A stretch of DNA of 38,771 nucleotides from assembly GCA_900088475.1 (NCBI GenBank), contig FLMG01004145.1:1-38771 (forward strand). The letters are read 5' to 3'. This stretch comes from Hyphochytrium catenoides (Eukaryota > Protista > Hyphochytriomycota). A program made the translations under genes and the position numbers. Shown piece after piece: positions 1 through 31,589 of the stretch. Numbering within the stretch: position 1 is the stretch's first letter; each line of letters opens with the position of its first letter. A model generated the notes under the pieces. That model ran no database searches. It was not told where the DNA came from and worked only from the letters and a program-made list of their open reading frames with translations.

Positions 1-287
1 CAGGTAAAGTGTGACCATGAAAGAGTTCGAGGGCCAGAGGGACCAGGTTCTGTCTGAAAACCAAGCTCCAGGAAGCCATCGCGTAGGAAATTGAGAGAAG
101 AGACATAGCCCAGGGTCTGGGACATTCACCAACGGGGAGAGGGAAAGATCTAAGGGTAGAGAGAGGAAGAGAGAGAGACAGAGAGAGAAAGAGAGTAAAG
201 AGGTCTACCAGGGGCCCACCGTGGTGTCAAGCTGTCTTATCATCTGGTATAATGCTCTTGAACTTTACTATTTTTGGATTAACGCAG

Positions 288-559
288 GGCGTCCTGCTAC
301 TAAACACGGTGCTGACGGTGCGGAGAGGCGAGCCGAACTCCCATAAGAACCAAGGCTGGGAGGAGTTCACCGCGGCGGTGCTCAGGGCCATTAACAAGCA
401 AAAGGAAGGAGTAGTTTTTTTGCTGTGGGGCAAGCCTGCACAGGTTTGACGGCTGCTTTCTGAACTATATAATGGCTGTCAAAGGAAACGGTTGGAAGAA
501 GCAAGAGAAGGACGAGGAGCAGACCTCATAGGGCACTCATCCGAAGCCAATTGGGCAAG

Positions 560-634
<75 letters not shown>

Positions 635-912
635 CAGGGAGAGAATCGGGTAGAGAGAGTGAGCATGTCATTCCTTCTGTTTTTAGTGCTCTCTTTCGAG
701 GTCTAATATCCGATGCTTTCTTGTGGTGCTCTGGGCAGGCTCGGGGAGCGGTATTAGACCGGAAGAAGCATCACATCATTACCTCCTCGCACCCGAGTCC
801 TCTAGGCGCCATGCAGACTAATGAGCCTTTCCTAGGTTCTCGGTGCTTCTCCAGAGTCAACGAGTATCTCAGCAACAAGGGTCTTGAGCCGGTTGACTGG
901 AACTTAGACTAG
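288..912 (+). CDS. UNG: Uracil-DNA glycosylase family 1, last two exons (288-443, 739-912); 5' part lies upstream of the window
   Basis: [11 protein letters not shown]...[12 protein letters not shown]...[11 protein letters not shown] | [23 protein letters not shown]...[14 protein letters not shown]...VDW. Contains the canonical HPSPL motif. GT-AG introns 4-287 and 444-738; the second is phase 0. Confidence 0.96.
567..630. repeat. (GA)n microsatellite in UNG intron
   Basis: Perfect GA dinucleotide run of ~64 nt. Confidence 0.95.
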
Positions 913-2388: not shown

Positions 2389-5300
2389 ATGGGTCGGAAG
2401 CAGTAAGTAAAGAGCTTCAACTAGCTCAGCTCCTCTTCCCATTCGCACCGACTTTGTTCCTTCTAGCCCACCAGCTCTCGCCCTCCGTCCCCAGCTTTTG
2501 CTCGTCCGTATCAGTTTGTTCTTCTTACGCTCTATTTTTCTCTCTCCCTTCACTCTCTCTCTCTTCTTCTCCTCTCTTTCTCTCTCTCTCTCTCTCTTCC
2601 CTGCCTCTGCCACTCTTTCGCGAAGACGCACAAGTGTCAACGGTCCGTCCACGGCCCCCGCACGCCTGGTGACGCGCTCTATTGCGGTGGACACTGTGTC
2701 AATCAGTCCTGCAGCCGTGAAGCCCAATCAGGTCGAGTGCTCACCACAGAATGACTGCGATGCCACGCAGATGGACCTCTTACGGCAGGTACTGGCAGCC
2801 CAAGGGCCTCTATTGCCCTCCTCGCTCATCCTCGCGGTGGCTAGCCCGCTCCGGGCGATTGCTCTCCTTCCCATTTCCTCTGTGTCTCTTCATTTTATAA
2901 TGTTATTCTGGCTGTAGGTGCAGGAGATCCACGCCCGCAGCGAGCAGCAGGGCAAGTACATTGACTCGCGGCAGTGTGAGCAGCTGGCGCAGCTGCTGAG
3001 CAGGTACAACGAGCAGGAGCATGAGTTCAGAAACAAGGAGCTGCACACGGAGTTCTATAACACGGTTAACAAGCTTATGAAGGTTCATCAGACCATTGTC
3101 GTTCGCTCTGACTCTCTCGCCTTATCTCCATCGCTTATGTCCCTCTCTCTCTCTTTCTCACTCTCTCTCTTCCTCCTTCTTTCTCCTCTCTTTTTCTCTA
3201 TCCCTCTCTCTCTTTCATTCATCTTCATTCCTTCCTCTCTACGTGTCTCGTCCCTTCCTGTCGCGATATGGCACTTAACTTTCTTCGGACTGCTTGCTCT
3301 TTCGACAGGCCCCGAACTCTAAGAGAGAGAGGCGGTTGTCTGAGTTGAAGGGTCAGATCGAGGATATTTTACGCCGCTGGATGAAGCACATCTATGACCC
3401 GTAAGGCAATGACACTCTATCGCATCAGAGAGCAACGTCTTCTTCTCGCTCCTCTCACTCTAAGTGCGCTCTGTCTCCAGCCTTTATCTCTCTGACTTGA
3501 TAGATCGAATGTCTCTTTCATCGTCGCTTAAGCTTATGCATCTTTCGTCCTTGGCCTTGCTAACAGGCATACTATGGACTATATGGCAACCAAGGAGATG
3601 AGCAAGTTTCAAAAGCAGGACAAAGAGGTTCGCAGCCTAATTGGAGAGTACGAATCTCTGGTGAGATAACGAAAAAGGAAGAAAAAGAGAGAGAGAGAGA
3701 GAGACGGCAAACACGGGCCATCCTTGCAGTTACGACGTTCTATTTCCCTTGGTAGAGACTAAGCTAAGTCCTTTCCTCTAGGTCCGCCGCGACTGGGAGC
3801 GCAAGCTCCTCCAGAATATGAAGCTCAATATCGCCTTCTATCACCTCTGCCTCTTGGAGTATCTATACCTGGCCGACGGCTATCTGACGAAAGAGAACGA
3901 CAGCCTCTTTCAGAGGCTGCTCAGAGGTAGGACAAGCACCACTGTTCTCCGGCCTACCGTCCAGCATATCTTCGCATTCGTGTCTCTGCTCCTTCCGCCT
4001 CGCTTATCTTCCCCAATTCCCTTCGGATGGCTCTCTATCACACTGTACGCGCATTCTCCCTCGGCCTTTCCCCCAGGGTTTGACCGCTTCTGTCTTTATT
4101 AATAACCCTAAACCTCCTAGAGCTGCAGCAGAACAAGCCTCGGAACAATGGGACGGCTATCTGGGTAGAGGAGACTGGGCTGATGCATAAGCCAGAGCTC
4201 CAAGCGTCCACAATCGCGACGGCGATCAAGAGGTGGAAACAGGTGACGTACTGATAGGGTGGCAGTACTCTTTTCGCTACATCCTATCCCCTTTGCGATT
4301 GACCTTATGGACTGATTTCTCCTTTGTTCTCCGTTATTACAGCTCGCAGACGGATTTGCGGATGCTCGTGAGCGCAAGTATAACAGTAAGGACGCTGTCA
4401 CGTCGCCGCGGACGTTTGCCATCAGCCTGTTTGCGGGCATGCCCTTCTTCTTCCTGGTGCGTGCAAATGAAGAGAACGGAGCGATCAGGAGAGACATTAT
4501 AGAAACGGAAGTGGGCTTTTGGCAGGCTGTCCTTATATCTCGGCTTCTTTCCGTCCGTCATTCTCCATCTTGCTGGTTTCCTCATCTTGGTGTCTCTAAC
4601 TGACATGATCGATCCTTTGTCTTCACCTCCAGCTCTTTGCTGAATCTGCGGGTCTGCATCCGTCTCCAGACGAGCTGTTTAGCTCTCAGAGCCTTTTCAA
4701 TCGCCTCTCTGTCTGGTGGCTAGTACTCTCAGCGATTGGCGTGCTAATCTTGATGGTCATATGCTGCGGGATATTTTTGGCCTGGGACCAGGGAGACCCC
4801 TCAGAGAGCTGTAAGCTGGATGCTTCTCAGTATTTAGTAGTGTTGGTCTGACAAACAGCGGCCTTGCCATGCTTACTCTGTTTATCGCTTCATCGTGCTA
4901 TCTATCGTTCGCGCCCTGTTGCATGGCTAAGTTTCATCTCTGCTCGTCCACTTCATCTCTCTTGTCCGTCAGTGGGTGTGAAAGGATCGCTTACAAGCTT
5001 TCTGTGGTCGGAGACACGCAGTGCGCGCGTGAGCTCAGCAGAGCTGAGCACTGAATATAACAAAGGCGCCAGCTTTGATGATCTGATCCTCCTTGCCAGC
5101 CAGTACGTACCTGTCCTCCGTTCTCTGCTCTTAGAGCCATCCACTGGTTACTTTTGGCAGCGCTATCTATCTACATGGTATCTACATGCTGTCCACCTTG
5201 GCACGCTCTCATCCATCGGCTCCCTCTACGACGTAGAAATTGGAAGCATTCCTTTGGCAAATTGCGGTGCTGTGTCCAACGGGTCTACACAAAGCCTCAC

Positions 5301-5395
5301 CCCCAGTATATCCTGACACTTAAGGTATGACGGAGGATGAAGGCGTTGAAGAGTTAGGGAGAATGGGTGTTCACTCGTGACTACAAAGTTGCATG

Positions 5396-5431
<36 letters not shown>

Positions 5432-7242
5432 AAGAGAGAAGAGAGAAGAGAGAGAGGGTAAGGGAGCTGCTATGTGCAGCTGCTGGTTCATATCACCTGC
5501 GGTGCCTGACTCTCATACTATCATCATCAAATATGCTAGACGGAGGATGGCAGCTTCTTGAATTTGCTGGCCGCCACGAAGGAGTCAGGAAATCGCTTCG
5601 GCATCCGCTTTGTAGGCCGCAAAGCCGACGAACTCTTTGACTCTAAGTCTGCAAAGCACGAGGGACAGGAAGGAGAGGACGAAGGATCAAAGAGTCAGGA
5701 AGAGGAAAGTCTTCTTTCGGAGTTGGCATCAGCTTGGACGTCGTACCAGCCTTTTGCCTCTTTGCAGTTGGTTGAAGGGTAAGCCCATCACTAGTTACGG
5801 GGCGCTCGAAGCTTGAGCTGAGAGATTGATCAATTTAGTTGACACCTACATCTCTCTCTCTTTCTTTCTCCCTTTCTGTACCGATGAATATTGGTCTATT
5901 GGCGGCCATGTCTGCGATTGTGGCCATTTCTCGATAGTGGTTTTATCCTCCTCGATCAAGGCGCTGCTACTGGTGCAGGAGAAGCTTCGTGTGAGCACTG
6001 TCAGGAGTGTGGCGTCGCTTGCTTAGAGCCGTTAGCTTTTATAAACTTCGTAAGACACAAAGCATATGCCCTCCCACTAGGCGTCAAAGTTGTCGCTAAC
6101 CATCCTAACCCCTCTACGTCTGCCAATGCATGCCCCTGTGTGCCTCCTCCGTGTCCTTTCAAAGGACAAGGCTGTGCATGCTGAGACTCGGGCCGTCCCT
6201 CGAGAGCTTAATGTGAGATTGCTTTTGATTAGCTGATCTAAGCAGGTTGCTGAGCGAGAACCTCTTCTCTGTCCTTGCCTCTCTTCGTGCTTGGTACGGT
6301 AGGTCTGGGTCCCTCCCGCATCCAGCACCTCAAAGAGGCGAAAGGTATCAAGCGGGTCATGTTTCTTTGAAAGGTGAGCCAAGGGCCCTCGTCTATCTCT
6401 CTTTCTTCGCCTTCTTTCGCCCTCTGTGAACTCCTTCTACAATGTCTAGACCGCCACTCTCCAGCCTCATCTTGTCTCAAGCCCCGAAGCCCTAAGAATG
6501 TACCTCTGCCTAGGACTAAGTCTCAGAGAAGCCGGCCAGAATTCTACGCGCTTGTGAGCAAGAATCCTATTTGGAATGAACGTAATACTTTGTCTAGAGC
6601 TCCCCTACGCTGTCCTCTTAGTCTTTTCTGTCACACAGCCTCACTACTGCTCTATACTTCTTATCCTGCTCTCTCTATTGTCAGACTCCTCCCCATAAAA
6701 AATGCATTTGTTCCTGACTAGTGCTATTCCTCTTGCTGTCATCATAGAGATCGGCGCCTACGTGCTTGACTTTGATGGGCGCGTGACCATGGCTTCCGCT
6801 AAGAATTTCCAGCTGATCCGGCCCCAAGAGAGTAAGAGACCAGAGAGGAATAGCCGTCTTAACTCTTCATTAATGTTCTTTCTTTGTGTATCAGATGATA
6901 ACGTGGCAAATGTGGCGTTGCAGTTCGGGAAAGTGGCTCAAAACAACTTCACTCTGGACTTTGACTGTCCCATCTCCCCACTGCAAGGTAGTTGATGCCT
7001 TCTATGAAAAGCTCTACCATCTCTCTGTCGCTGCACTAGCAGCATCGTACATATCTCCTCCAATACCCAGATTGCTGTTCGTAGGCCGCTGGGTGCTGCT
7101 ATCCAAAGCTCTGGCCATCGTCTCCTACTGCCCTACCGATTGTTCTAAAGCACAGTCTTTCCCTTTCTTTTGCTCTCTTCGCACCACAGCGTTTGCCGTG
7201 AGCCTGAGCATCTTTCATCACAAGCTTGTGCTGAACAACTAG
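2389..7242 (+). CDS. Tubby-domain protein with a helical N-terminal region and two transmembrane helices (~690 aa, 19 exons)
   Basis: Phase-consistent GT-AG exon chain: 2389-2402, 2626-2788, 2918-3082, 3309-3400, 3567-3660, 3782-3926, 4121-4242, 4343-4456, 4633-4810, 4973-5102, 5237-5324, 5540-5778, 5938-6049, 6165-6212, 6303-6373, 6514-6581, 6748-6831, 6895-6987, 7190-7242 (2073 nt). The C-terminus [33 protein letters not shown]...[37 protein letters not shown] matches the Tubby C-terminal signature. The domain start GKLRCCVQR...PQYILTLKTEDGSFLNLLAATK also aligns with Tubby. Confidence 0.85.
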
Positions 7243-7439
7243 CTGCTTGGGCTTCTCGATGGAGCTCTGCTGCCCGCCATTCAATGTCTTCATTCCAATT
7301 GCTAGGGCCGAGAGATTTCCTTCAACCTTTGAGAGTTAGGTTATGGAGAGATGAAGATGTGCAAGCCAGCAGGAGAGAATATACCCAGCTAACTCTAATG
7401 AAGGGGGCTCTAGCCCAGGCACATGACTCTTTCCCATGC

Positions 7440-8219
7440 TTAAAGATTGATCACCTCCGGCATCACTGTCTCTTCGTCTCTATCTTGGTCTCTCTCTAGC
7501 AATCTAGAGTCCAAAGAAGAGAAAATGCGTTCCGCCGTGGTGGCCGCAGACGTAGCTGGAGAAGGCCCGTACGAGCTTCTTGCCTTCTTGCTGGCCTTCT
7601 CATCCACAGCGGTGTCAGCCATCATGTTGGGGAAGTGGCGCCGTAGAAAGGATCGCTGCCATGACTTTGAAAAGGCTTTCTTCTGCTCTGAAGAGCGGTT
7701 GCCCATCTGCAATAACCTAGCGGCGCACTCAGACATCATCTTCTCGGTGATGATCTCTCGCCGGCTCCGTCTGTCTGTCACCCACCACACTAGAAATTTC
7801 TCTTCATCCTCTGTAAGCCTAGTGGCAGGCCCAGAACGCTTGATCTCTTCAACGCCCCTCTTCTTGATGATCTGCGCTTGTCTGAAGATCGTGGTCTTGG
7901 GGATACTATAAGCAGAGTACAGCTCAGCCGCTCTCGATGCCGTGAGCTCGCCTCTAGCGACTTGCGAGGCCGCTTCGAGGAGCTTCTCAGGAGGATAGGA
8001 CTTCAGCTTCTTCCCTCTGTTGTTGTTGTGCGTGTTGAGATCGCGGTCTCCAGTCCTTTCTCTTCTTCCCCTTTCGGTGCTAGGCTGGGCGACCGCAAGC
8101 GTGTCGTCTAAACCATGGTGTCCATGCACGACAAGTTGAAGCGACCTGTGTGCTGCTAATGGAGAAGAGCTGCGGTGGCCCCGAAGAGCCTCCTCCAATG
8201 ACTGGCCTCTCAGCATCAT
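7440..8219 (-). CDS. HTH-psq + CENP-B/Tc5-type HTH DNA-binding protein (pogo/Tigger transposase-derived, no DDE domain)
   Basis: Single 259-aa ORF. KSYPPEKLLEAASQVARGELTASRAAELYSAYSIPKTTI is psq-like. GPATRLTEDEEKFLVWWV...IITEKMMSECAARLL...FSKSWQRSFLRRH is a CENP-B HTH. The ORF ends ~60 aa later with no catalytic domain. Confidence 0.8.
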   Translation of the reverse strand: MMLRGQSLEEALRGHRSSSPLAAHRSLQLVVHGHHGLDDTLAVAQPSTERGRRERTGDRDLNTHNNNRGKKLKSYPPEKLLEAASQVARGELTASRAAELYSAYSIPKTTIFRQAQIIKKRGVEEIKRSGPATRLTEDEEKFLVWWVTDRRSRREIITEKMMSECAARLLQMGNRSSEQKKAFSKSWQRSFLRRHFPNMMADTAVDEKASKKARSSYGPSPATSAATTAERIFSSLDSRLLERDQDRDEETVMPEVINL

Positions 8220-9592
8220 TTGAGACAGAAGCTGAGACGGAGATCAGCTTACGAAGCTAGCCATGGCCTCATCATGGCCCGGCGTAAAGGAGTGGGCTCA
8301 CCGCCTCCAATGAGAACAGACATAATCCATTCGGACAAAGTTGATGAAGGCGTTCTATCGTTTCTAATCCACCGACTAACATCTTCATTCAAATGCTCTG
8401 CGCATCAATCTGCATATTAGCGGTGCGAGATATCGCCCACCCTGCAGCAAGGGCTTCATACAATTCCAATCACAGCGCTCAACGCGCTCTCTGTGCAGCG
8501 CCTGACCTGCCGTAGAGCTCAGCGCGCCGCGCCTTGGAAGAGGTTTGCGGAGGTGTTGCCGATGAGAAGTGGTCAACGCTCTGGAAGCGGGCAAGCAAAA
8601 GAGAGAGAAACGGAGTAGGGTCAGACAGAGAAATACAGGGTGGAGACAGAGAGACATGAGAAGAGAGAAATTACAGAGTTCCGGGAGGCTGAGGAGGAGA
8701 CAGGGTGCTAGAGAGATATCTAGGAGCAGAGACAGAGAGACAGAGAGATACGTAGGAGCAAAGACAGAGAGATAGAGACTACAGATTGAGAGAGAACAAG
8801 AGAATTGAAACCTTTCACCCTACCATCTCCTGGAGGAGTACTGGCTGGGTGACCGGTAAAATGGCAGATTCAGAACCACCATTCACGAATCTAAAGCGTC
8901 ACATATCTTTATGATACAATTCCCAATGCTTCGTCTGGAAAATAGATTTCAGAGACTCTGTGAAGGCTTACTTATGTTTGCTTTTTTGATTCCTTCCTAC
9001 TGGAATAAAGGAAACATTGGGTGAAGAAACAAGAAGCGAGACGTGGCACAGAGGGGGAGAGAGAGNNNNNNNNNNNNNNNNNNNNNNNNNNNNNNNNNNN
9101 NNNNNNNNNNNNNNNNNNNNNNNNNNNNNNNNNNNNNNNNNNNGAGAGAGAGAGAGAGAGAGAAGAGTGAGCTAGCTGTAGGGCAGGGTGGCAGCTCCAC
9201 AGCCCCAGACGAGACTGAACTGGATTGCGGTGATGTGATGAGCGTGTTGGTCCTCTCTGAGTCTCTCTCTCTCTCTTGCTCTCTCTCCTCTTGCTCTCCC
9301 CTCCGTCCCCGTCACTCTCCTCCCACTCCCGCTCGCTTGTTGTCCCCTCTCCTCTGTCCCTGCTGCTCATCACCATAGCTCCACTCTGGCTCTCACTTCC
9401 TAACAGCTGCGTCTGACAGCGCAAACCAGTCTTTCCAAGCTTTCTAAAGGCCCCAACTAATCCTCAGGTGAGATTCTTGGCTGTCTTCAGAGTCGTCCGC
9501 AGACTTGCGCATTGTCCTTAGCCTTCCTTTCCCTCATCGCTGCAGAGAGAGCAGCGTCCCTACCCGGTGGCTGCTGCTGAGATATATCCCAA

Positions 9593-13900: not shown

Positions 13901-16900
13901 TCCTTTGCTGCTCACGTGCTGCCCCATATGATTGTGATGATCGTTCTTAACATGGTTGAGAAATTTGTGCTGTCACGAGCCCAGAGTCTCATGTACTGGC
14001 CCGTCTTCTGTCTGCGCTTAGGTCCAGCCTGAGGCCATTGGGACCATTGTCGGCAAAAGTGGGGCAACCGTTAAGAAGTTCCAGGAAGAGTTCGGAGTGA
14101 CCATTGACGTTAGAAAGAGGTAAAAGACAAGTACGAGAGTGTCTCACATGAACGGATGTGCTAGGAAGGAGTGAGATAGTCAGTGTGAAGGATAAGGCGT
14201 GACGTACTTCTGTACATGTCGCTTGTATGCATTTTGATTTCTCTGCGTTGGGGGAGTGCTATGCTAGGGGCAGACGTAGCCGTTTGTCCTGTGGTCTGCT
14301 TCTCCTAAGGCTTCGCGACTAACGTGGCGTCTCATCATCACGTTGTACACAGTGGAAAGTCTGTTCGGATCAAGGGCGAGCCTGAGAATGTTTCCAAGTG
14401 CCGCGCAGCTATCCTCAAGATTATCAATGACACGATCATCACCGCCACAGTGGACATCCCTGCCGAGAAGTGAGTGTGAAATAATAAAAATGATGAAGGA
14501 AGTGACCTTAGAGAGAAAGGTGGAACTGAAACAAGAGCCAGAGATCTCCTGTCAGCCTAACGTCATCCAACCGTGGATCAGCCCCCAGGCCTTACTCACA
14601 GCGAAGTACAAGCTCCCTCGTTATACTTACAGGCTCTTGTTTGTTCTAGGGCTGGGCGGGTGCAGCAGTTCAGTTCCCTGCTGAAGGATCTGGAAGCCGA
14701 TGGCGGCGTCACGGTGAACTTCACGCCAGATAAGAAGGCTGTGAAGGTATGTGCCCTTCGTCACCTCTTTTTTCTCCGTCTTCTTGCTCTCTAGCTGCTA
14801 TAGTAGATGCGATAGTCTCACCAAGTAGAGTCTAGTAGTCTCATAGCTCTCCTCTTTTTGCCAATAGCAGCTTTCTAACCTCCACTCTGACTCGCAGATT
14901 CGGGGCAATGGCAACGTTGTTGGCGCAGCCAGGCGTCGAGTACAAATGCTTGTTAAAGACTGGCTAGAGGAGCCTCTCCCCGTCCTCACGGAGCACCTCA
15001 CCGCTCTACCAGCCAAGAATATCCAGCAGATAAAAGAGAAGCATGGAGTTAACCTCACGCCAGTTAGTACAAGCTCTCATTTCTTTTGAGCTTATCTTCC
15101 TTGGGTCAATCGATCGAACACTCTCTCGTCTTCGTTCCTTGCTAAGAGTGTCCCCTGAAATGCTGATTGTTTTGGCAGGACAAGGAGCTCGGGGCTTTGG
15201 TGCTTGCAGGGCCTGTGGAGAATGTCTTAGCTGCAAGAGGAGAAGTCGAGCAGCTGCTTAGGTTTTTCTTCCAGTCACATTATAAAGACGTGGTGGTGCC
15301 TAAGGGCGCTATCGGTATGTGCGACGATGTGGGCCCTTCCCTCTTTGTCTTCCTGAGCGTTGGGATTCTCCTACTTGTCGTTGCTTTTGCCGCAGCTAGT
15401 TCCATTTATATCCACACGATGCAGCTCCTTGCGATGTCTGGCTCTTCTCACATGTCTCTCCTTTGGCAGCCCTCCTTATGAGAAAGCGCAGAGAGATAGA
15501 GCAGGCTACTGGGGCTCTGCTGAGCCCTGACGCCCGCCAAGGTCGCGTGACGCTCATCGGAAGGACAGACGAGGATATTGTTAAGGCGAGAGAGGAAGTG
15601 CAGAACGCGGTAGAGGAGCACCGGCGGACGCATCAAGAAGTGGACGTGAAGGATCCTTACCTCGCCTCCTTCCTGGTTGGAAAGAAGGGCGCGACTATCA
15701 CAAAGGTATGACCCTTGCCTTCTAATTCTCTTTGCACCTTTCTGGCTGCCCTCAGTTAGCTCGGCTGACGACGTCGTCCCACAATGCCGCTCTTCCTCCG
15801 CTCTCTCTCTACTGGCAGCTTGCAAAGGAGACCGGCGCAAAGCTAGACTTGAACCGTGACGCCAAAGTCCTCATCATCACAGGTGAGGGAGAGGCGGTAG
15901 CGGCTGCAAAGGAAGCCGTAGAATCGCTGATAGAGAAGTATCACAAGGAGAATGCAGGTATGCAAGACCGAACCTTGACTGATTGGACACCTTAGTTCCC
16001 CTTCTCTTAAGAGCTTACAATGCTCTGCCTACATCTTCCACCTTGCGCTAATGTCCGGCCTTATGCACCTAGTGCTGGAGGTGGATGAGGATGAGGTCCC
16101 ATCACTCATTGGAAAGGGCGGCAGCGGCATTAAGCGGCTGCGTGAGGAGACGGGCTGCAACATCAACATCTCAGACCGCGGAGGAGTCATCCACCTGCAA
16201 GGCTCCGAAGAAGCCATTGCTCAAGCGAAGGAGGAAATAAAGAGAATTATCGGCGACAAAATGAAGGTAATCAATAGTCACCTCTCTTACTCTGCTATCT
16301 CTTTCTCCCTCCTTTTTTTATGTAGTTGCTCTTCCTGTCCTTCTCTCTCTCTTTCTCGTTCTCGCTCACTCTCGGTCTTGCGTTCTGTCTGTCTCTCTCT
16401 CTGTGCTCTTCCCCTCTCTCTGTCTCTCTCCTTCTTCTCCCCATTCTCTTCAAGGCGTCTCATGCCTGCTCATTTACCGGCTGCCTCACCCCTTTCCCCT
16501 CTGCCAGTGATACCTCACCTCATAAGATTGAAATCCATTCCTTGACTGCTCCTTGATGCGCTCATTTATGCGGCTGTTGCGCCCTTGTCCCTCTCATTCT
16601 TTTCCCAGGTTACCCTCTCCTGCTCCTCGTATGCAGCCGGACAGGTCATTGGCAAAGGTGGAGCCACGGTGAAGGAGATTCAGAGCAGCACGGGAGCTAA
16701 GATCGACGTGAATCGTGAGAGTAGGACTGTAGTGATCAAGGGCTCGGAGGAAGAGGTCGAAGAGGCCAAGCAGAGAGTGGAGAAGATCATTGAGGAGGCC
16801 AACAAGAGCGCCCCACCGCCGCCACCTCCTGCGCCTGTGAAGAGCAAGCAGGAGAACGAAGAGGAGGAGAAACCTGCTGATGCTCCTAGGTAACTGCAGT

Positions 16901-19678: not shown

Positions 19679-22600
19679 CTAGCAATCAAAGGTCCGAATG
19701 ACCCTGACCCATGTCGCTCTGCAAACCGGGCACTGCGGAGCGCTCGACGCTCTGCTGAGAATAGTGCAACAGCTCAAACAGACACAGCGATGGCCACATG
19801 GCTCCAGGACTGTGTCGATGGAACAGTCCTCACAGACCTAAACAGTGGAGACGGCCAGTAAGTAACCATGAGACGGCCAGTAATGACTATGAGACGGACC
19901 AACGCCATGATAAAGACATACGTAGTATAATGGAATGTGAAAAATATTCACAAAGAGCACTAAGATGAGCTCGCTTCACCTTGCAGAGATTCGCGTCCAT
20001 GAGCTGCTTTAGCTGCCGGCGGAGTCTCCTCACCTCCTCCTCAAGCTCCAAGCTTGGTACCTCTTCACTTGCTGCTCCGACTCGTCCATTCGAATGCGAA
20101 TTCTGGTGATCAAGCCTAAAACTCTTGGACAAGGTCTCCTTCAAGTCTTGACAAGAAGCCATAATCTGAGCCAATAATTGACGGTCAACACATGTCCAAT
20201 CTGTGGTCCAAGAGAGCTGGCCAGGGTCTATAATAACTAACCTTTCGCCTGTGACCCAAGGGAACGCCCAGCTCTCTGAGGTCAAGATCGGAGAGGAGCA
20301 ACAAGGAGTCCACATCAATCCTCTCGGCCTCGAACCTGCGCAAAGGCGTGACCAAAGGAAGAGGCATAAAAAAGTAAGGACACGCCTCGCCCCGCACCAG
20401 AGAATGAGAACAATCCCCAATGCCTGAGGAGGCATCTTACATGTCCACGTACTGCGCCATTGAGAGCGCTTCCAGGAAGTCAGAGACACCGGAGGGAAAC
20501 GACGCTGGCTTCTTGCCCTCAAGCGCCTCAAAATGATTGAATGAAGCTGAAATCGGTCCCAATCCCGCTGCATCAGCTCCGTTCCTCTGTCCGCCGCTTT
20601 GTCGATGCACGTCAGCTCTTCTACCTGCTCTGGTACCCTCGTCTATTGCACAGCTCTGAACTCTACTGACCATCATCTCTTCCATCGCGGCCTTAACAGC
20701 AGGTTCTATCTTCACACTTCTTAGGTCATTGTAGAAAGCGCCGTCAAATCCTCCAAAGATAAACAGCCTGTCTTCAAAGACGACTGCGCCGTGCCGTCGT
20801 CGTGGAGAAGGAGCAAGACCAAAATCGGTTATCTGCGGAGTGCTCCAGCGAGCTCTCACCGGGACACCATTGTGGTAGGACTCTACAGCGCCGATGGAAG
20901 CCCAAGTTAATGGGCCAAAGCAGGAGAGACGAGACAGAGGATATGCCCCAAATGGGCAAAGAGAAACACGGGGCAATCATCAGATAGAGTAGATCTCATG
21001 CAACATGATCATACTCGAGGTAACTCCTTCAAGACGTCGTTGGTCCTGAGCAATCGACGTGATAGAGAGTTTCATGTGCAGGCAAAACTAATGCACTCCG
21101 AGTAGCACACAGAAGGAACGTTCGAAGATTAGGGGAAAGAGTGCGCGGAAGATGAGCTTCCTTGGGAAGAGACATACCGATTGTGAGAATATGACAGTCG
21201 TTGAAGTCCATTCCGGCCCTGCCACCAAACAACACGAAGCTCTCTCCAACACAAGTCATACTATGGCCCCACCGCGCTGCCGGTGGGGTGCCAGAGAGAG
21301 CGGGCTGGGACCACCGCGCCTTTCCGCTTCGCCCCTCAAAGGAGAGAAAGTGCAGGTCATCATGACAAGAGTAGTCCCTACCGGTTGTGCCACCAAAGAG
21401 TAAGGCTGAACCGGAGGAGGGATGAGAAGTAAGAGAATGAAAGCGACGAGGGGAGGGAACACTGCCTTCCGCATGCACCTTCAGCCACCGGACAGACCCT
21501 ACATTTGTGGTATGAAGTCGGATGACAGAGAAGTTAAACGATTCGGGTTGGAGAGACAATTGACGGAAAGCAAAGGAGAGAGGTCGTGGAGAAAGAGGTG
21601 AGAGCGTAGATCAGGAGGGGAGATTCACCGAGGAGACTTGCCCATACCATCCTGCAACTCGGTGAGGTCGAGAACGAGGAGATCGTTCAAGTCAAGCCCA
21701 GAACCGGAAACGAAGCCGCCAAAAAACGCTAAATAATCTACAGTCAGGCGTCGAGGATCAGATCAAAGTGATCGCAAAAGAAGAGGAAGAACGGCATGCA
21801 ATGTAAGGGCAAAGAAAAGAAAAGGTCTGAACACATCTAGCATAGTTTTGAGCCATAGTTGACAAGCAACCTGTCTGCATCTTATCACCGACCACAGCTG
21901 CAGCTTGAGAGGAACGAGCTGGGGGAGCTAGTCCGCCTACTCGAGGATGCCACCAGATCCAAGGCTCCATGGCTACGAAGGTGAGACAACAAAGCCCGCA
22001 TGAGGACGGAGTAACTTTTCCATAGCTGAGTGGCACCGAAAAAAGCTAAGGAAGGAGGACAGAAAAGCATATTTGTCGAAGACGCTCTCGCTGCGAAGTA
22101 AAGACAGTAGACGATTCCTGAGAGGAGACCGCAGATCCAAGAGCCATGCGAGCACAGAGTCAGCTATCCTCAGAAGACCCGACACTCGAAACCGCCTCTC
22201 CCCCGCATAATAGCCTTCCTACCAATGTCTAGGACGACGACATCTTGGAAGTCACAGAACCCAACACCCCCGAAGAGAACAAGGGATGTCCCCATGAGGG
22301 TGCATGTGTGGTTTGACCGTGAAGCCGGGACAGTCCCGTGCACCAAAGGCTTGAGCCACTCCATCTCATCTGCAAAAGTGAAGGCATCAGTACAGCACGT
22401 CAAGCAACAGACCCCAACGCAGAGGCAAGGGAGCTCATCGCGTCAGCGCACAGCTCCCGACAGAGAAGAATGCGGGAGAAGTGGATAGAAGGTAAGAACC
22501 ATGCGAGGAGCGTCTTACTCACCAAAGTCGAGCACGTACAAATCTGCCAGATATCCTGCGTACGAGCAAGAAGAAGCTGAGGACTTCCACTAGATGGGTT

Positions 22601-22850
22601 ACCACTTGGGCCTTTTAAGCACTTACTGCCATCATAGCCGCCGAAGACGATCATCTTCCCGTCAACGACGTTGCAGCTATGGCCCCATCTCTGTAGATGG
22701 ACAGACACATGAGAAGGACGACAAAGAGGACGATACTTTGCCTTGCTATACCCGAGAGGGAGGTCCTGGGAGAAGAAGATGAGTGGGCGATTCTTTCTTC
22801 CAGACTGTTTGCTCCGTCGCTTGACCATCAAGCTCATGTTGAGTTGCCAT
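19679..22850 (-). CDS. Kelch-repeat (6 blades) - SAM - coiled coil - RING (C3HC4) putative E3 ubiquitin ligase; multi-exon
   Basis: Kelch blades: RWGH..FGGYDG, RSNH..FGGVG, RSSQ..FGGF, RRFH..FGGTTG, RWGH..FGGRAG, RRRH..FGGFDG. SAM: VSDFLEALSMAQYVD|FEAERIDVDSLLLLSDLDLRELGVPLGHRRK|LL. RING: LCK|VCEDCSIDTVLEPCGHRCVCLSCC...CPVCR, stop at 19679. Confidence 0.88.
19848..19910. repeat. Degenerate ~21-bp tandem repeat (3 copies) in last intron of Kelch-SAM-RING gene
   Basis: gagacggccagtaagtaaccat / gagacggccagtaatgactat / gagacggaccaacgccat. Confidence 0.75.
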
Positions 22851-23189
22851 TCTGCGTAAGGGCAGCGGAGGGCAATCAAAGCCCGCTAGCCCTGCCATAA
22901 ACTCCTCTCGCCAAAAATTGTACTAGCCTAGAAGACTAGTTGCATCACACTGCTCTCTTGGCTTAGGTAGAGTTCACATGGGAACTGCCTAGATTCGCCC
23001 TCTTCCCGTTCTACCCAGGGACATCATCTCCAATAAGTTGGTAATTACCGAGCCTCACAGAAGCTTCTCCAAGCGCTGTTCATTCCCTCCTAGGTGGACT
23101 ACGGTACTGTCTCGACACAAAGGCCTGAGACATTTAGAAGCGGTCTCAGCTCCAGCGCGGACGGGCCTTCAGAAGAAAGTGATGGACAG

Positions 23190-23240: not shown

Positions 23241-24376
23241 TCATCGCCTCCCTTGTAAGATCGTGACTATTGATTACTAATAACTGATTCTTGAGGGCTG
23301 CAAAGAGTTTTCTTGTGATGCAGATTTTGCTGCACAGAACATGTCGACCAGCAGATCGGCTGATCTTCAGGTTACAGGGTGGTAACAGAGCGAATCTGAG
23401 GGAGGAGGGCGGAGTATGATTTGGGTATGGGAGTCCTGCTACAGTTTATGTCCCTCTTTTCTCTCTCTCTCTCTCTCTTTCTCTCTTTCTCTCTCTCGAA
23501 CTCTTCCTTATTCCTTCTCTTTCTTTGTCTCTCTCTCGTCTCTCTCTGTCTCTCTCTGTCTCGATTGAGTGATCGCTCTCACTGTAGCTGTCTCTTTATC
23601 TCTCCCTCCTGGCCTTTCTTGTCTTTGTCTCCCCCTTTCTATGGAGGTGCTTGCTCCCTTCGTCCCAGTTCTCCAGGTGCCCATCATCTTTCTCTCTCTT
23701 TCNNNNNNNNNNNNNNNNNNNNNNNNNNNNNNNNNNNNNNNNNNNNNNNNNNNNNNNNNNNNNNNNNNNNNNNNNNNTCTCTCTTCTCTCTCTCTCTCTG
23801 TGGGTTCACACCCATCTCTCCCTGCCGATCCGCCCCTCAGCTTTGAATTGTAGGGAGATGGAAACAGGACGAAGAGAAAGAGGTCAGACAAAGGGCAAGA
23901 ACAGTGGAGAGAAAGGAGAGAGAAAGAGAGATAAAGCAGGTTCATCTTATCTCCTGATCGATTGACTGACAGGAGGACGAGCCGTTCTGCCTTCTGCTAC
24001 CTTTACTCTTCTGCTGTGTTGAAGTCGGGAGAGGAAGAGAAGGGAGAGACTCAGAGTAGACAAAAGAGAGTTCACAGTGCATCGCAGATCGATCTCTCAG
24101 TCTTATATCAGGCAAAGGAGAGCGGTACAACCTGGAGAGAGAGAGAGAGAGCTCTAGGCGTTGTTGCCCTTCGAAGGGCACTTCTGCTGCTCTTCTCTCC
24201 TGCTTCATAAAAGCTGGTCAAGAAAGAGAGAACAGGCGCACCAAGCAAAGTGAACAGAAGCTGTGATGAGTGAGACGGAGGCACGGAGACAGACAGAGAC
24301 AAAAAGCAAGANNNNNNNNNNNNNNNNNNNNNNNNNNNNNNNNNNNNNNNNNNNNNNNNNNNNNNNNNNNNNNNNN

Positions 24377-28362: not shown

Positions 28363-28600
28363 CTTTTATGGGATAGACTCTGCCTGTTCAAGGACTGCGA
28401 TGTGCAGTTTACGGGATGATGGTCACTTTCGGAGATCAGACATCATCATCAAGCATCGCAGACAATCGGTCTGCACCAGCGGCAGGGCCTCACTGCCCTG
28501 CCTGGCCTCAGTCTGCAGCCGTCCCCGCGTCAAGCTGCAGACACCGAGCCGCGAGGGAGGGGAAGAGACAGAGCAAGACCCCGAGCGCGTAGGGAGCAGG

Positions 28601-28796
28601 ATGGGACAGGAAAAGCTACGGATTCTCTGTCTGCACGGACTCTATCAGAACTCCAAGTCTTTTGCAGAGAAAGTGAGACCGATCAGGTGAGAAGATGGCG
28701 GCGCCTCCTAGAGCCTTGGGATCTCTTGTCCTCTTAACCGTCTTCACTTCCCCTTCGTTCTCTCCCGCCCTTGGGGTGGTCTTCCCTCTTTTCTGA

Positions 28797-28843
<47 letters not shown>

Positions 28844-29763
28844 CTCTGTGTCTCTGTCTCTCTCACCCTCTCTCTCTCTCTCTGTCTCTCTCTCTTTCTT
28901 TCTCTCTCTCTCTCTTTCTGTCTCTCTCTCCCCCTTCTCTCTCTCTTCGAATACTCATCTCTGCTTTTTATATAGCGATGCCTGCCAAGACTTGGCCGAA
29001 TTCCTCTTCCTAGATGGTCCTTACCTTGTAACGCCGAAGATACTCAGCCGACCGCCTCGGTCCTCGAGGATCAGACCTAAGGCTCATGGAGCACTAGATG
29101 CGCAACAGGGCGCCCGAGGGCTCTCTTCCTCTTCAGTTCATCCCTTCCGTGCCTGGTGGGTCCCACCTGGCGTGGTAGGAGAGGTTGGAGAGGGAGAGAG
29201 GGACAATGCAATGGCCCCAGAGATGCACACTTGCACTGCCTTCCACATCAAGCGCTTTCTAGCTTCAGCGGAGCCTGTTGACGGCATTCTTGGGTTCTCG
29301 CAGGGCGCCGCCCTTGCTTCACTGCTGTGCACCAATGAGGTCAGACCGCCAGCTATCAATTATCTACCGCCTTCTTCTATTCTGTCTCTCACGTTCCTAG
29401 GCTTGAAGTGACCAGGGACATCCACTTATCTCTCTCCCTCTCTCTGTCCTATCTCTCTCACAGGCTGCAAGGCATATGGAGTGGACTCCCAGTCGAGCCA
29501 TTTATATCAGCGGATATGTGTCAGACGACAGCCGAGGAATGCACGCAGAGATGTTTAAGTCTAACGTGATCCCTCATCTACAAACGTTACACGTCTACGG
29601 AGAGCAAGACAGAGTAGTGCTGCCAGAGAAGAGCAGAGAGATGGCTCTGTTCTTCCGTCATCAGAAGGAACATCGAGCGCTTGTGCACCGCCATGCTGAC
29701 GGCCACATTGTGCCGAAAACTGCAGAATTTGTCGACCTCGTGCGGAGATTTCTCTCTGCCTAG
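28601..29763 (+). CDS. OVCA2: FSH1/OVCA2-type serine hydrolase (alpha/beta hydrolase), 3 exons
   Basis: LRILCLHGLYQN, FLFLDGP, RAWW, nucleophile elbow DGILGFSQGA, LHVYGEQDRVV (Asp), HADGHIVP (His). An upstream in-frame ATG at 28400 could extend the N-terminus. Confidence 0.9.
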
Positions 29764-30332: not shown

Positions 30333-31589
30333 TTAGCGGAGCCTTCCCACTCTGGGAATGGCACTTGTAGCTCTCTTCCTGGGCGCTGTGTCAGTCGTAT
30401 CTCTACTCGCGCTTGGTCGCCGGTTCAGAGGCCTTCATAAAAGTTTAGTTTAGAGATATGCATCATACCATCCTCCCCTCTTCCGCTCACATCCGTCCAT
30501 CTCGAATCCCTATCCCGCATGCTTAGTCACCATTTGCCAGTTTCCTTACCTCTGTAGTCTGGTGTCCGTATACCGCCTGGCGCCAAGACCAGCACGTAGA
30601 GTGCTGGACGAGGGTTGAAAGCGCGCGGCCAGCGGCTCGGGGTTTGTCTGTGGCACCATCTCAAGAAGCTCCTCATCCTCCTAAAGAATAAGTGCAAGGT
30701 AGAGAGAGAATTTGATGAGGAACTGGTGGGGTCTTACCCGAAGTAGAAGGCATTGGCACAGTTAGCGTGAAGCTCTAAGTGAAACGAAGTAGGAAAGGCG
30801 AGGGAGACGAGGGGAATAAGGCTAAATTCTAAGAGAAAATCAAAGGTAGGGTCTTAATAGCAAATGGTAGACCTGGACCGGAGGAACAGCCGGATAAGCC
30901 ATCTCTGTGTATCTTGGAGGTTGGGACACTGCCAAACGGAGAGGTAAATGTGGTTAGAGAAAGTTCGAAGGAAGCAGTAAACCGAACAGACTCAAGGCCT
31001 AAGAGACAGAAAGAGGGGCAAGGGAAGTTCACTTGATAGAGAAGAAGATAGTGAAAAGGGAGAAATAGCTCACTAGCATTTGCAGACCTTTATTCTGTGC
31101 TTGCAGTTGGACTGTCACTCTCTCCCAGACCTGCAGCCAAGTGTCCATGAGGCCACTCGTGTTCTCAACCGTTGTAATTAACGTGTTGAGGTTCTGACTG
31201 GCTGACTTTAAGTTGCTGTTGACCTAACGGTTTACAGCAGCACACAAGTGCATTAGACAAAGCTGGGTAAGAGGAGGATCCAAGAGCTCAGCTTCTCCAG
31301 CTGTCAATAGAAGACCGTTGATCGTAAAGAAAGGACCGACGAGGAAATGGTTGAGTAAGACGGCTAACTCAAGAGAAAAAAGAGAAGATGTCAAGAAGAG
31401 TGAGAGGGTTGGTGCGGAGACTCGTACATCTTTCAATATGGCCGCACACTTCTCGAACATGATGGCCTCTGCTAGGGCCTGTGAGTTCATTCCAGACACC
31501 TCTGGGTCCACTTCGGAAGTCACACTCTCGTTCACTGCGCTGCAGTCCATGTCCATGCCGCTCTCGTCCATTGCACTGCTGGTGTCCAT
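30333..31589 (-). CDS. DUO1: Duo1-like DASH/Dam1 kinetochore complex subunit (~180 aa; exons 31589-31428, 31223-31074, 30680-30550, 30432-30333)
   Basis: Phase-consistent exons. The core ALAEAIMFEKCAAILKDVNSNLKSASQNLNTLITTVENTSGLMDTWLQVW resembles the Duo1 helix (TV.NAS.LL.TW.RIL pattern). The basic tail ends KRATSAIPRVGRLR* and carries an SxIP motif. Confidence 0.62.

What the first reader, a model, noticed from the sequence alone, without database searches (positions are those of the whole stretch)
2389..7242. Integral-membrane Tubby protein: helical N-terminus + 2 TM helices + Tubby domain
Seen: an unbroken phase-consistent exon chain links two hydrophobic segments (TFAISLFAGMPFFFLLFA; LSVWWLVLSAIGVLILMVICCGIFLAW, separated by a short loop) to a complete Tubby domain. 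The key junction is 5102^5237 (..LAS-Q-NWKHSFGKLRCCVQR), which is invisible in the ORF track. Known: animal TUB/TULPs and plant F-box TLPs are soluble proteins recruited peripherally to membranes. Inference: a TM hairpin would leave both the N-terminal helical region and the Tubby barrel in the cytosol, giving a permanently anchored trafficking or ciliary adaptor. I do not recognise this architecture.
Basis: partly seen in the sequence, partly recalled or inferred. Interest (0 to 1): 0.85.

Follow-up and report, generated by a model that had tools for sequence, protein, structure and literature searches.

The report
Membrane-anchored Tubby protein gene model
A 19-exon gene in an unidentified, poorly sampled protist most likely encodes a Tubby-domain protein joined to two membrane-spanning segments and lacking the usual lipid-binding residues, an arrangement I found in no other Tubby protein, but it rests on a gene model with no transcript or orthologue to confirm it.

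Summary
Window 2389-7242 (+) contains a stop-free chain of 19 exons, all with GT..AG introns. It runs from ATG 2389 to TAG 7240-7242 and gives 686 aa, or 691 aa with a better-scoring exon-16 acceptor.

The product has four parts:
- about 285 aa of charged, unassigned N-terminus;
- two hydrophobic segments (aa 289-306 and 328-354, the second being the most hydrophobic 19-mer in all six frames of the window);
- a 52-aa linker;
- a complete but divergent Tubby domain (Pfam Tub, 69 bits on the C-terminal piece alone).

The weak point is exon 10 (4973-5102), which links the membrane part to the Tubby part. Homology cannot settle it, because a stand-alone Tubby gene starting at ATG 5175 fits the Tubby profile equally well. 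Codon statistics do support it. Exon 10 scores like the other exons and above every intron window. Its frame has no ATG and an upstream stop, and skipping it creates a stop.

I put about 0.8 on the fusion. The cytosolic hairpin topology and the adaptor role are inference only.

One new point: the PI(4,5)P2-binding K330/R332 pair and the RKRKK patch are both absent, which fits an anchor that replaces lipid binding.

No orthologue, transcript or other membrane-spanning Tubby protein was found. This is a new variant of a known kind.

The parts
2389..2402 (+). Exon 1: ATG plus 11 nt (MGRK + 2 nt of Q), followed by donor GTAAGT
   Evidence: donor PWM 5.1. Joins exon 2 in phase.
2626..2788 (+). Exon 2 (aa 5-59), Ser/Thr/Pro/Val-rich N-terminus
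   Evidence: Codon score +18 in frame. The acceptor follows a long CT tract.
2918..3082 (+). Exon 3 (aa 60-114), start of the charged, probably helical region
   Evidence: +31.6 against -13.2 and -1.3 in the other frames. Only sub-threshold Pfam GAT (17.8 bits, cut-off 31) and repeat-summed armadillo hits.
3309..3400 (+). Exon 4 (aa 115-145)
3567..3660 (+). Exon 5 (aa 145-176)
3782..3926 (+). Exon 6 (aa 177-225)
4121..4242 (+). Exon 7 (aa 225-265)
4343..4456 (+). Exon 8 (aa 266-303). Ends with the first 15 residues of hydrophobic segment 1.
4412..4641 (+). Hydrophobic segment 1 (TM1), aa 289-306, TFAISLFAGMPFFFLLFA. Encoded by 4412-4456 plus 4633-4641, so intron 8 lies inside this span.
   Evidence: Kyte-Doolittle 19-mer mean 1.74. 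The 15 residues before it have net charge +3. It contains G-M-P, so it is marginal as a membrane span.
4633..4810 (+). Exon 9 (aa 304-363): end of TM1, 21-aa loop, TM2, start of linker
   Evidence: +1.1 against -12.8 and -9.9 in the other frames
4705..4785 (+). Hydrophobic segment 2 (TM2), aa 328-354, LSVWWLVLSAIGVLILMVICCGIFLAW
   Evidence: Kyte-Doolittle 2.93. Top-ranked hydrophobic 19-mer of the whole six-frame window.
4973..5102 (+). Exon 10 (aa 363-406): Ser/Thr-rich linker. This is the exon that ties the membrane part to the Tubby part.
   Evidence: Codon score +5.0, against 5.9+-3.7 for exons and -5.6+-4.4 for 233 stop-free intron windows, none of which reaches it. Frame contrast 21.6 exceeds all 544 intron windows. 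No in-frame ATG, and a stop at 4849-4851 upstream. Skipping it gives TAA.
5237..5324 (+). Exon 11 (aa 406-435): first recognisable Tubby strands (HSFGKLRCCVQR..PQYILTLK)
   Evidence: Local Tubby HMM, N-terminal half 6.9 bits; MAFFT alignment
5540..5778 (+). Exon 12 (aa 436-515): FLNLLAATKESGNRFGIRF plus an acidic insertion of about 31 aa. The positions of the PI(4,5)P2-binding residues fall here.
5938..6049 (+). Exon 13 (aa 515-552), GFILLDQG..CEHCQECGVAC..LAFINF
6165..6212 (+). Exon 14 (aa 553-568)
6303..6344 (+). Exon 15 (aa 569-582)
6482..6581 (+). Exon 16. Acceptor 6481 is preferred (PWM 3.8) and gives a 691-aa product. The alternative start 6497 (PWM -1.7) gives 686 aa.
6748..6831 (+). 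Exon 17: [27 protein letters not shown]
   Evidence: Pfam Tub 69.4 bits, E=5e-19, on 6750-6986
6895..6987 (+). Exon 18: [30 protein letters not shown]
7190..7242 (+). Exon 19: central C-terminal helix [17 protein letters not shown], then stop TAG 7240-7242
4849..4851 (+). TGA reached if intron 9 is retained. This would give a helical, two-segment protein without the Tubby domain.
5314..5316 (+).
   Evidence: The read-through part has an intron-like codon score.
5175..5177 (+). ATG inside intron 10, in frame with exon 11. This is the start of the rival stand-alone 301-aa Tubby model.
   Evidence: fits the Tubby HMM equally well. Codon score of 5175-5237 is -11.4.
5135..5136 (+). Alternative AG acceptor. 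It is in frame with the exon 9 donor and would replace exon 10 by 33 aa that include a third hydrophobic stretch.
   Evidence: Acceptor PWM 7.1, but codon score -7.9 and HMM score 4.2 bits.

Best explanation
One gene (2389-7242, + strand, 19 exons) encodes a protein of about 686-691 aa. Its parts are:
- a charged, probably helical N-terminal region of about 285 aa, of no recognised family and with no signal peptide;
- a hairpin of two hydrophobic helices separated by a 21-aa acidic loop;
- a 52-aa Ser/Thr-rich acidic linker;
- a complete Tubby beta-barrel domain.

Proposed mechanism (inferred, not shown): the hairpin inserts with both ends on the cytosolic side. The Tubby barrel is then held permanently at one membrane, instead of being recruited reversibly by PI(4,5)P2 as in TUB/TULP3 and plant TLPs. 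In line with this, the lipid-binding K-x-R pair and the neighbouring basic patch have been lost, while the conserved C-terminal half of the barrel is retained. The barrel would then serve as a protein- or cargo-binding module, and the N-terminal region as the partner-binding end of a resident membrane adaptor.

Shown here: the exon chain, the coding status of the linking exon, the hydrophobic segments, the Tubby homology and the missing basic residues. Inferred: the splicing in vivo, the topology, the loss of lipid binding and the adaptor role.
For: Exon chain:
- It is stop-free, GT..AG throughout and in phase.
- For exons 3-11, which were not used for training, the model frame is the best of three in 9 of 9.

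Exon 10:
- Codon score +5.0, in the middle of the exon distribution (5.9+-3.7) and above all 233 stop-free intron windows (-5.6+-4.4). Frame contrast 21.6 is above all 544 intron windows.
- Its frame has no ATG between the stop at 4849-4851 and 5102, so it must be spliced to an upstream exon.
- Exon 9 ends in phase 1 and exon 10 (130 nt) delivers the phase 2 that exon 11 needs. Skipping exon 10 gives TAA (sequence).

Flanking spacers:
- They are 162 and 134 nt and pyrimidine-rich like the other introns (purine 0.36 and 0.35, against 0.53 for exon 10).
- The only clear same-strand intergenic gap nearby, from the UDG gene to ATG 2389, is about 1.5 kb.
- Leave-one-out splice scores for the four critical sites are low but within the range of the homology-supported Tubby introns.

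Hydrophobic segments:
- TM2 has Kyte-Doolittle 2.93 and ranks first in the six-frame window. TM1 has 1.74 and is preceded by net charge +3. The loop has net charge -2.

Tubby domain:
- Pfam Tub 69.4 bits. Local HMM 148.7 bits for the C-terminal half and 6.9 bits for the N-terminal half.

Lipid-binding residues:
- K330/R332 map to the GKLRS motif of mouse tubby (their role is from PMC10445746). The window protein has no K or R there in the MAFFT alignment or in two manual registers.
- RKRKK (residues 301-305) corresponds to ATKES.
Against: - No transcript, orthologue or sister-species copy of this gene could be retrieved, so the splicing is only predicted.
- Homology does not discriminate between models. 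A stand-alone 301-aa model from ATG 5175 scores 158.8 bits against 158.1 for the fused model. Exon 10 adds only about 1-3 bits.
- Stand-alone Tubby proteins of about 300 aa are common in marine protist metatranscriptomes.
- The splice sites around exon 10 are among the weakest in the gene (donors 2.0 and 3.1, acceptor 5236 at 0.4).
- A stronger in-frame alternative acceptor exists at 5136.
- TM1 is marginal, with a central Pro and Gly.
- The residues just after TM2 are acidic (-2), which does not favour a cytosolic C-terminus by the positive-inside rule.
- The alignment across the acidic insertion in exon 12 is uncertain, so the loss of lipid binding is an inference.
- No DeepTMHMM or AlphaFold run on the spliced product was possible here.
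Confidence: 0.6

Rival explanations
1. There are two transcription units. An upstream gene encodes the helical, two-segment membrane protein and ends by read-through at 4849-4851 or 5314-5316. A separate ordinary soluble Tubby gene of about 300 aa starts at ATG 5175. On this view the 'fusion' is an artefact of chaining open exons.
For: - The stand-alone model fits the Tubby HMM as well as the fused one.
- Soluble Tubby ORFs of about 300 aa are the norm in the marine metatranscriptome relatives.
- The splice sites flanking exon 10 are weak.
- The genome can be compact: only about 200 nt lie between the Tubby stop and the stop of the next ORF, on the opposite strand.
Against: - Exon 10 is clearly coding, in a frame with no ATG and an upstream stop, so it belongs to the upstream exons.
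- If it ran on to 5316, it would overlap the proposed Tubby first exon in another frame.
- The stretches 5104-5313 (frame 1) and 5175-5237 (frame 0) score like introns: -9.4 and -11.4 against the intron background, and -2.5 and -7.9 (for 5139-5237) against the window background.
- The 3' end, intergenic region, promoter and 5'UTR would have to fit into about 320 nt or less.
- No AATAAA or ATTAAA occurs in 4600-7600. This is weak evidence, because the organism's polyadenylation signal is unknown.
Confidence: 0.15
2. The gene is fused as proposed, but only the strongly hydrophobic second segment spans the membrane. The protein is then single-pass (N-terminus in, C-terminus out) and the Tubby barrel faces the lumen or the cell exterior.
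For: - TM1 is marginal (Kyte-Doolittle 1.74, central G-M-P).
- The flank after TM2 is acidic (-2 over 15 aa, -4 over the 52-aa linker).
- The PI(4,5)P2 residues are lost, and that lipid is not expected on the non-cytosolic face (established knowledge).
- The Tubby part has 7 Cys, including a CxxCxxC cluster, and one N-x-T sequon.
Against: - The 17-residue core of TM1 is strongly hydrophobic and is preceded by net charge +3, as expected for an N-in first helix.
- A 21-aa loop followed by a strong second helix is a typical hairpin.
- All characterised Tubby domains act in the cytosol or nucleus (PMC5350516, PMC11114105; abstracts seen).
Confidence: 0.15
3. The gene is fused, but through the alternative acceptor at 5136. 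Exon 9 joins a longer exon 5137-5324, replacing exon 10 by 33 residues (IHWLLLAALSIYMVSTCC...). This would add a third hydrophobic stretch and change the topology.
For: - The acceptor PWM at 5136 is 7.1, against 1.4 on the same matrix (0.4 leave-one-out) for 5236.
- The join is in frame with no stop.
Against: - The codon score of 5139-5237 is -7.9, and the stretch is pyrimidine-rich like an intron.
- This model would leave the clearly coding exon 10 unused.
- It has the lowest N-terminal HMM score of the three models, 4.2 bits.
Confidence: 0.05
4. The locus is a decaying or mis-assembled gene, and the membrane part is meaningless.
For: The assembly is a draft with N gaps elsewhere in the window. 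The N-terminal half of the Tubby domain is divergent.
Against: - There is no N and no frame break in 2389-7242.
- All 19 exons are open.
- The C-terminal Tubby motifs are well conserved.
- The codon signal is exon-like throughout.
Confidence: 0.05

Closest known systems
Animal TUB / TULP1-3 (Pfam Tub, PF01167; structures 1C8Z, 1I7E, 2FIM, 8FH3)
   Same: A C-terminal Tubby barrel of about 260 aa, about 30% identical over the whole domain. It keeps the conserved FxLNFxGRVTxASxKNFQL, LQFGKV..FTxDF and PLSPLQAFAxxLSxF motifs and a non-conserved N-terminal partner-binding region.
   Different: The animal proteins are soluble and bind the membrane peripherally through PI(4,5)P2, using K330/R332 and the RKRKK patch. 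Here both are missing, two hydrophobic segments lie 52 aa upstream of the domain, and an acidic loop of about 31 aa is inserted in the barrel.
Plant F-box Tubby-like proteins (TLPs)
   Same: A Tubby domain at the C-terminus and a different functional module at the N-terminus.
   Different: No F-box was detected in any N-terminal exon. Plant TLPs are soluble and bind PI(4,5)P2 (PMC11114105, abstract).
Stand-alone protist Tubby proteins of about 300 aa from marine metatranscriptomes (loci L003-L013)
   Same: Protist origin, the ..DF.GR.(T/S)MASAKNFQL.. motif, and by eye a Cys-x-x-Cys cluster in the middle of the barrel.
   Different: They are complete soluble ORFs of 270-340 aa without any hydrophobic segment. 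They are only 34-42% identical in the C-terminal piece, which is less than the roughly 60% seen with canonical TULPs.
Phospholipid scramblases (PLSCR) and DUF567/LURP1, members of the Tubby-like superfamily
   Same: The idea of a Tubby-like barrel that is permanently tethered to a membrane (Bateman et al. 2009, PMC2639001).
   Different: They belong to a different family. Their 'TM helix' is the C-terminal core helix of the fold, and tethering is thought to be by palmitoylation. Here the domain is a true Tub-family domain and the hydrophobic segments lie outside it, on the N-terminal side.
Hairpin-anchored membrane-tethered factors (SREBP type). A functional analogy only, recalled from general knowledge.
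   Same: Two membrane spans with a short luminal loop, separating two cytosolic domains.
   Different: There is no sequence relationship, and no evidence for proteolytic release here.

Membership tests
Tubby family (Pfam Tub, PF01167) | Match to the family profile above the curated cut-off | tested here: met
   69.4 bits against a cut-off of 27, E=5.2e-19, on window 6750-6986 alone. The spliced model scores 158 bits against a local HMM built from 65 library Tubby proteins.
Tubby family (Pfam Tub, PF01167) | Complete domain: N-terminal strands (G.vqCyI.R, yP.Y.L.L, FLLAakK) as well as the C-terminal half and the central C-terminal helix | tested here: met
   The C-terminal half scores 148.7 bits and the helix [13 protein letters not shown] is present. 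The N-terminal half is recognisable but weak (6.9 bits, conditional E 2e-4), with an acidic insertion of about 31 aa. The fold itself was not modelled.
Tubby family as PI(4,5)P2 sensors (TUB, TULP3, plant TLPs) | Canonical lipid-binding pair K330/R332 (GKLRS motif) | tested here: not met
   The motif position was fixed on 1I7E and its role taken from PMC10445746. The window has SELAS, ASLQ or F.S at these positions, depending on the register. The alignment is uncertain because of the nearby insertion.
Tubby family as PI(4,5)P2 sensors (TUB, TULP3, plant TLPs) | Second basic site, residues 301-305 (RKRKK) | tested here: not met
   LLAGRKRKKSKTSNY corresponds to LLAATKESGNRF. One Lys remains.
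Tubby family as soluble, peripherally recruited proteins | No membrane-spanning segment | tested here: not met
   Two hydrophobic segments, Kyte-Doolittle 1.74 and 2.93. None occurs N-terminal to a complete Tub domain in the 150 best representatives, the 12 metatranscriptome ORFs or P0271.
TULP3-type ciliary IFT-A adaptors | N-terminal IFT-A-binding helix; ciliated organism | not testable with these tools
   The N-terminal exons have no significant family or PDB match. The organism is unidentified.
Plant F-box TLPs | N-terminal F-box | tested here: not met
   No F-box hit at E<=1 in any N-terminal exon. The exons were searched separately, which lowers sensitivity.
Integral membrane protein with a helical hairpin | Two segments long and hydrophobic enough to span a bilayer, a short loop, and flanking charges that fit the orientation | tested here: inconclusive
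   TM2 clearly qualifies. TM1 is marginal. Charges are +3 before TM1, -2 in the loop and -2 after TM2. No dedicated topology predictor could be run on the spliced product.

The most novel reading that the evidence does not exclude
Only the second hydrophobic segment spans the membrane, so the Tubby barrel sits on the luminal or extracellular side. That would be the first non-cytosolic Tubby domain. It would have given up phosphoinositide binding and might be stabilised by its extra cysteines. A related reading, also not excluded, is a hairpin-tethered Tubby factor that is released by regulated proteolysis instead of by PI(4,5)P2 hydrolysis.
Probability: 0.15. Interest if true: 0.8.

Novelty: new variant of a known kind. 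Interest (0 to 1): 0.55.

Why it matters
All studied Tubby proteins work by reversible binding to PI(4,5)P2. That reversibility underlies both the model of a transcription factor released from the membrane and the ciliary-adaptor model.

A natural Tubby protein that is built into the membrane and has lost the lipid-binding residues would separate the barrel's membrane-recruitment job from its other jobs, such as cargo, partner or nucleic-acid binding. It would therefore show what the barrel does when lipid sensing is dispensable. It would also add a new architecture to a family whose protist members are almost unstudied.

The practical limits are real. The organism is unknown, and the claim rests on one predicted gene model.

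Tried and rejected
Searches for relatives:
- An exhaustive representative search with the C-terminal Tubby piece gave 507 hits. The best were about 60% identical generic TULPs. None of the top 150 matches the N-terminal or membrane region.
- Word-indexed homologue searches with exon 12 and with exon 10 inside a longer stop-free reference found no candidates. That tool's length window also keeps exon-sized queries from reaching full-length proteins.
- The metagenome scan gave 14 loci. Twelve are complete soluble Tubby ORFs from metatranscriptomes, none with a membrane segment or the N-terminal region.
- An exact look-up of the window's intronless PLP-enzyme ORF found nothing on record. A homologue search with it found one Logan contig (ERR11593399, 74% aa identity, syntenic), which shows that a sister species has been sequenced. 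Everything else was 48% identical or less: oomycetes, chytrids, bacteria. The sister's Tubby locus could not be reached.

Family and structure searches:
- Pfam and PDB searches on the separate N-terminal exons gave only sub-threshold GAT and repeat-summed designed-armadillo hits, which I treat as helical-composition noise.
- Rfam found nothing in the window.

Tests that did not discriminate:
- I hoped the Tubby HMM would favour exon 10 over the stand-alone and alternative-acceptor models. It does not, with a difference of only 1-3 bits.
- P0036, the one library hit with several hydrophobic stretches before a Tub fragment, has only the last 90 aa of the domain and looks like a chimeric gene call.

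Literature:
- Searches found no integral-membrane Tub-family protein. The 2011 Genome Biology review was not held.

Not done:
- DeepTMHMM, InterProScan and AlphaFold on the whole product.

Full report
**What the window is.** The window is intron-rich eukaryotic DNA with about 51% G+C. It has GT..AG introns full of (CT)n/(GA)n microsatellites and a few N gaps. The organism is not identified. Its intronless PLP-enzyme gene (32618-34216) has one 74%-identical, syntenic match on a Logan contig from run ERR11593399. Every other match is 48% identical or less, to oomycetes, chytrids and bacteria. The lineage is therefore barely sampled, and this limits every comparison below.

**The observation.** I rebuilt the exon chain from the sequence.
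- Exon 1 is 2389-2402 (ATG..GCA|GTAAGT) and joins exon 2 (2626-2788).
- Seventeen further exons follow, ending at TAG 7240-7242.
- There are 19 exons and 18 GT..AG introns of 63-226 nt. All phases are compatible and there is no internal stop.
- The product is 686 aa, or 691 aa with the better-scoring exon-16 acceptor at 6481.

A codon model trained only on the PLP-enzyme ORF and Tubby exons 12-19 puts the model frame first in all nine untrained exons 3-11. TM2 is the most hydrophobic 19-mer in all six frames of the window.

**The Tubby domain is real.**
- The stop-free piece 6750-6986 scores 69.4 bits (E=5e-19) on Pfam Tub.
- The spliced product scores 158 bits against an HMM I built from 65 library Tubby proteins. 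The C-terminal half is strong (148.7 bits). The N-terminal half is weak but recognisable (6.9 bits). An acidic insertion of about 31 aa lies between them.
- Identity to ordinary TULPs is about 30% over the whole domain and about 60% in the C-terminal motifs.

**Is it one gene?** This is the crux, and homology does not answer it. Recognisable Tubby similarity starts in exon 11. A stand-alone 301-aa model from ATG 5175, which lies inside 'intron 10', fits the Tubby HMM as well as the fused model does (158.8 against 158.1 bits). Stand-alone Tubby ORFs of about 300 aa are also what marine metatranscriptomes contain.

The decision rests on exon 10 (4973-5102):
- Its codon score of +5.0 sits in the middle of the exon distribution (5.9+-3.7). 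It is above all 233 stop-free intron windows (-5.6+-4.4).
- Its frame contrast of 21.6 exceeds all 544 intron windows.
- Its frame has a stop at 4849-4851 and no ATG up to 5102. It therefore cannot open a gene and must be spliced to an upstream exon.
- Exon 9 ends in phase 1. Exon 10 is 130 nt and so delivers the phase 2 that exon 11 needs. Skipping exon 10 makes TAA.
- The sequence after 5102 in the exon-10 frame, and the sequence from ATG 5175 to 5236, both score like introns. Both spacers are pyrimidine-rich like the other introns.
- If exon 10 instead ran on to the stop at 5316, it would overlap the supposed first Tubby exon in another frame.

Caveats:
- The four splice sites around exon 10 are among the weakest in the gene, although they fall within the range of the homology-supported Tubby introns.
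- An in-frame alternative acceptor at 5136 scores better as a site, but the exon it creates scores as non-coding.

I put about 0.8 on a fused transcript of some form.

**Topology.**
- There is no signal peptide at the modelled N-terminus.
- TM1 (aa 289-306) has a strongly hydrophobic 17-residue core but contains G-M-P. It scores only 1.74 over 19 residues. The 15 residues before it carry net charge +3.
- The 21-aa loop has net charge -2.
- TM2 (aa 328-354) is unambiguous.
- The 15 residues after TM2 have net charge -2.

A hairpin with both ends cytosolic is the most economical reading. A single-span form with an external Tubby domain is not excluded.

**A new point.** Using the 1I7E chain (last residue 265 = E505), K330 and R332 are the K and R of the GKLRS motif. 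Residues 301-305 are RKRKK. Their role in PI(4,5)P2 binding is described in PMC10445746. In the window protein neither site is basic. RKRKK corresponds to ATKES. The K-x-R positions carry E/A, S/Q or F/S, depending on the alignment register. The register is uncertain because of the nearby insertion, but no register restores the pair. The loss of the lipid-binding residues, together with the gain of a membrane anchor, is the main argument for the proposed mechanism. It is an inference from the alignment, not a measurement.

**Comparison with what is known.** The protein is a member of the Tub family by profile and motifs. It fails three features that characterise the studied members: solubility, the K/R pair and the basic patch. 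The N-terminal exons have no F-box and no other recognised family.

I found no other Tubby protein with a membrane segment N-terminal to a complete domain. I checked the 150 best library representatives, 12 metatranscriptome ORFs and the 712-aa Phaeomonas parva protein, and the literature searches found none either. This sampling is limited. Only 150 of the 507 hits could be inspected, and no database of architectures could be queried.

The nearest concept in the literature is the 'membrane-tethered' Tubby-like superfamily, which includes the scramblases (PMC2639001). In those proteins the hydrophobic helix is part of the fold itself.

**Verdict.** The topology and function are plausible but untested. 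The architecture is a new variant of a known family, of moderate interest. It is worth a cDNA check and a look in the sister species before anything else.

Noticed in passing
window 6832-6894: Intron 17 is 63 nt, in frame and free of stops. If it were retained, it would insert 21 aa between the two most conserved Tubby motifs rather than truncate the protein. This is why 6750-6986 could be searched as one piece.
   Followed up: partly
window 32618-34216 (+): A 532-aa intronless ORF for a Cys/Met-metabolism PLP enzyme (cystathionine gamma-synthase-like) sits in an otherwise intron-rich region. Apart from one 74% Logan hit, its best relatives are 38-48% identical oomycete, chytrid, glomeromycete, Nannochloropsis and bacterial proteins. 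It could be a horizontally acquired gene.
   Followed up: partly
L001 (Logan ERR11593399 contig, 3175 nt) against window 31090-34182: A sister-species genomic contig is syntenic with the window. The PLP-enzyme gene is 69% identical at nucleotide level, and an upstream exon (window 31090-31226) is 79% identical. The run comes from a very large assembly, perhaps a host-plus-symbiont or environmental sample.
   Followed up: partly
window 7440-8219 (-): A 259-aa ORF with Tc5-transposase (HTH_Tnp_Tc5, E=2e-10) and Psq helix-turn-helix domains. It looks like a pogo/CENP-B-like element or a domesticated copy. It lies tail-to-tail only about 200 nt from the Tubby stop codon.
   Followed up: no
window 261-909 (+): Exons of a uracil-DNA glycosylase gene lie upstream (..[24 protein letters not shown].. 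and ..HPSPLGA..; Pfam UDG is sub-threshold on one exon). The gap of about 1.5 kb to ATG 2389 is GA/CT-microsatellite-rich.
   Followed up: partly
window 5980-6010 (exon 13) and loci L003-L013: The window's Tubby domain carries a Cys cluster (SCEHCQECGVAC). By eye it lies at roughly the same place as a conserved RCExCExxGxRxCG motif in the marine metatranscriptome Tubby subfamily. Canonical TULPs have no such cluster. It may be a metal site. The HMM did not align it.
   Followed up: no
window 16051-16260 (+); 20437-22879 (-); 28500-29411 (+): Other genes in the window: a KH-domain exon (E=5e-15), a multi-exon Kelch-repeat gene (Kelch_KLHDC2_KLHL20_DRC7, E=2e-21) and an FSH1-type serine hydrolase (E=1e-10).
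   Followed up: no
window about 9100-9200, 23700-23780, 35240-35290: Runs of N (assembly gaps) appear as X stretches in the ORF translations. All of them lie next to CT/GA microsatellites. None lies inside the Tubby gene.
   Followed up: no
window 4760-4768 (aa 346-348, ..VICCGIF..): A Cys-Cys pair lies near the C-terminal end of TM2. In a hairpin topology this would be the cytosolic membrane boundary, a typical position for S-palmitoylation.
   Followed up: no
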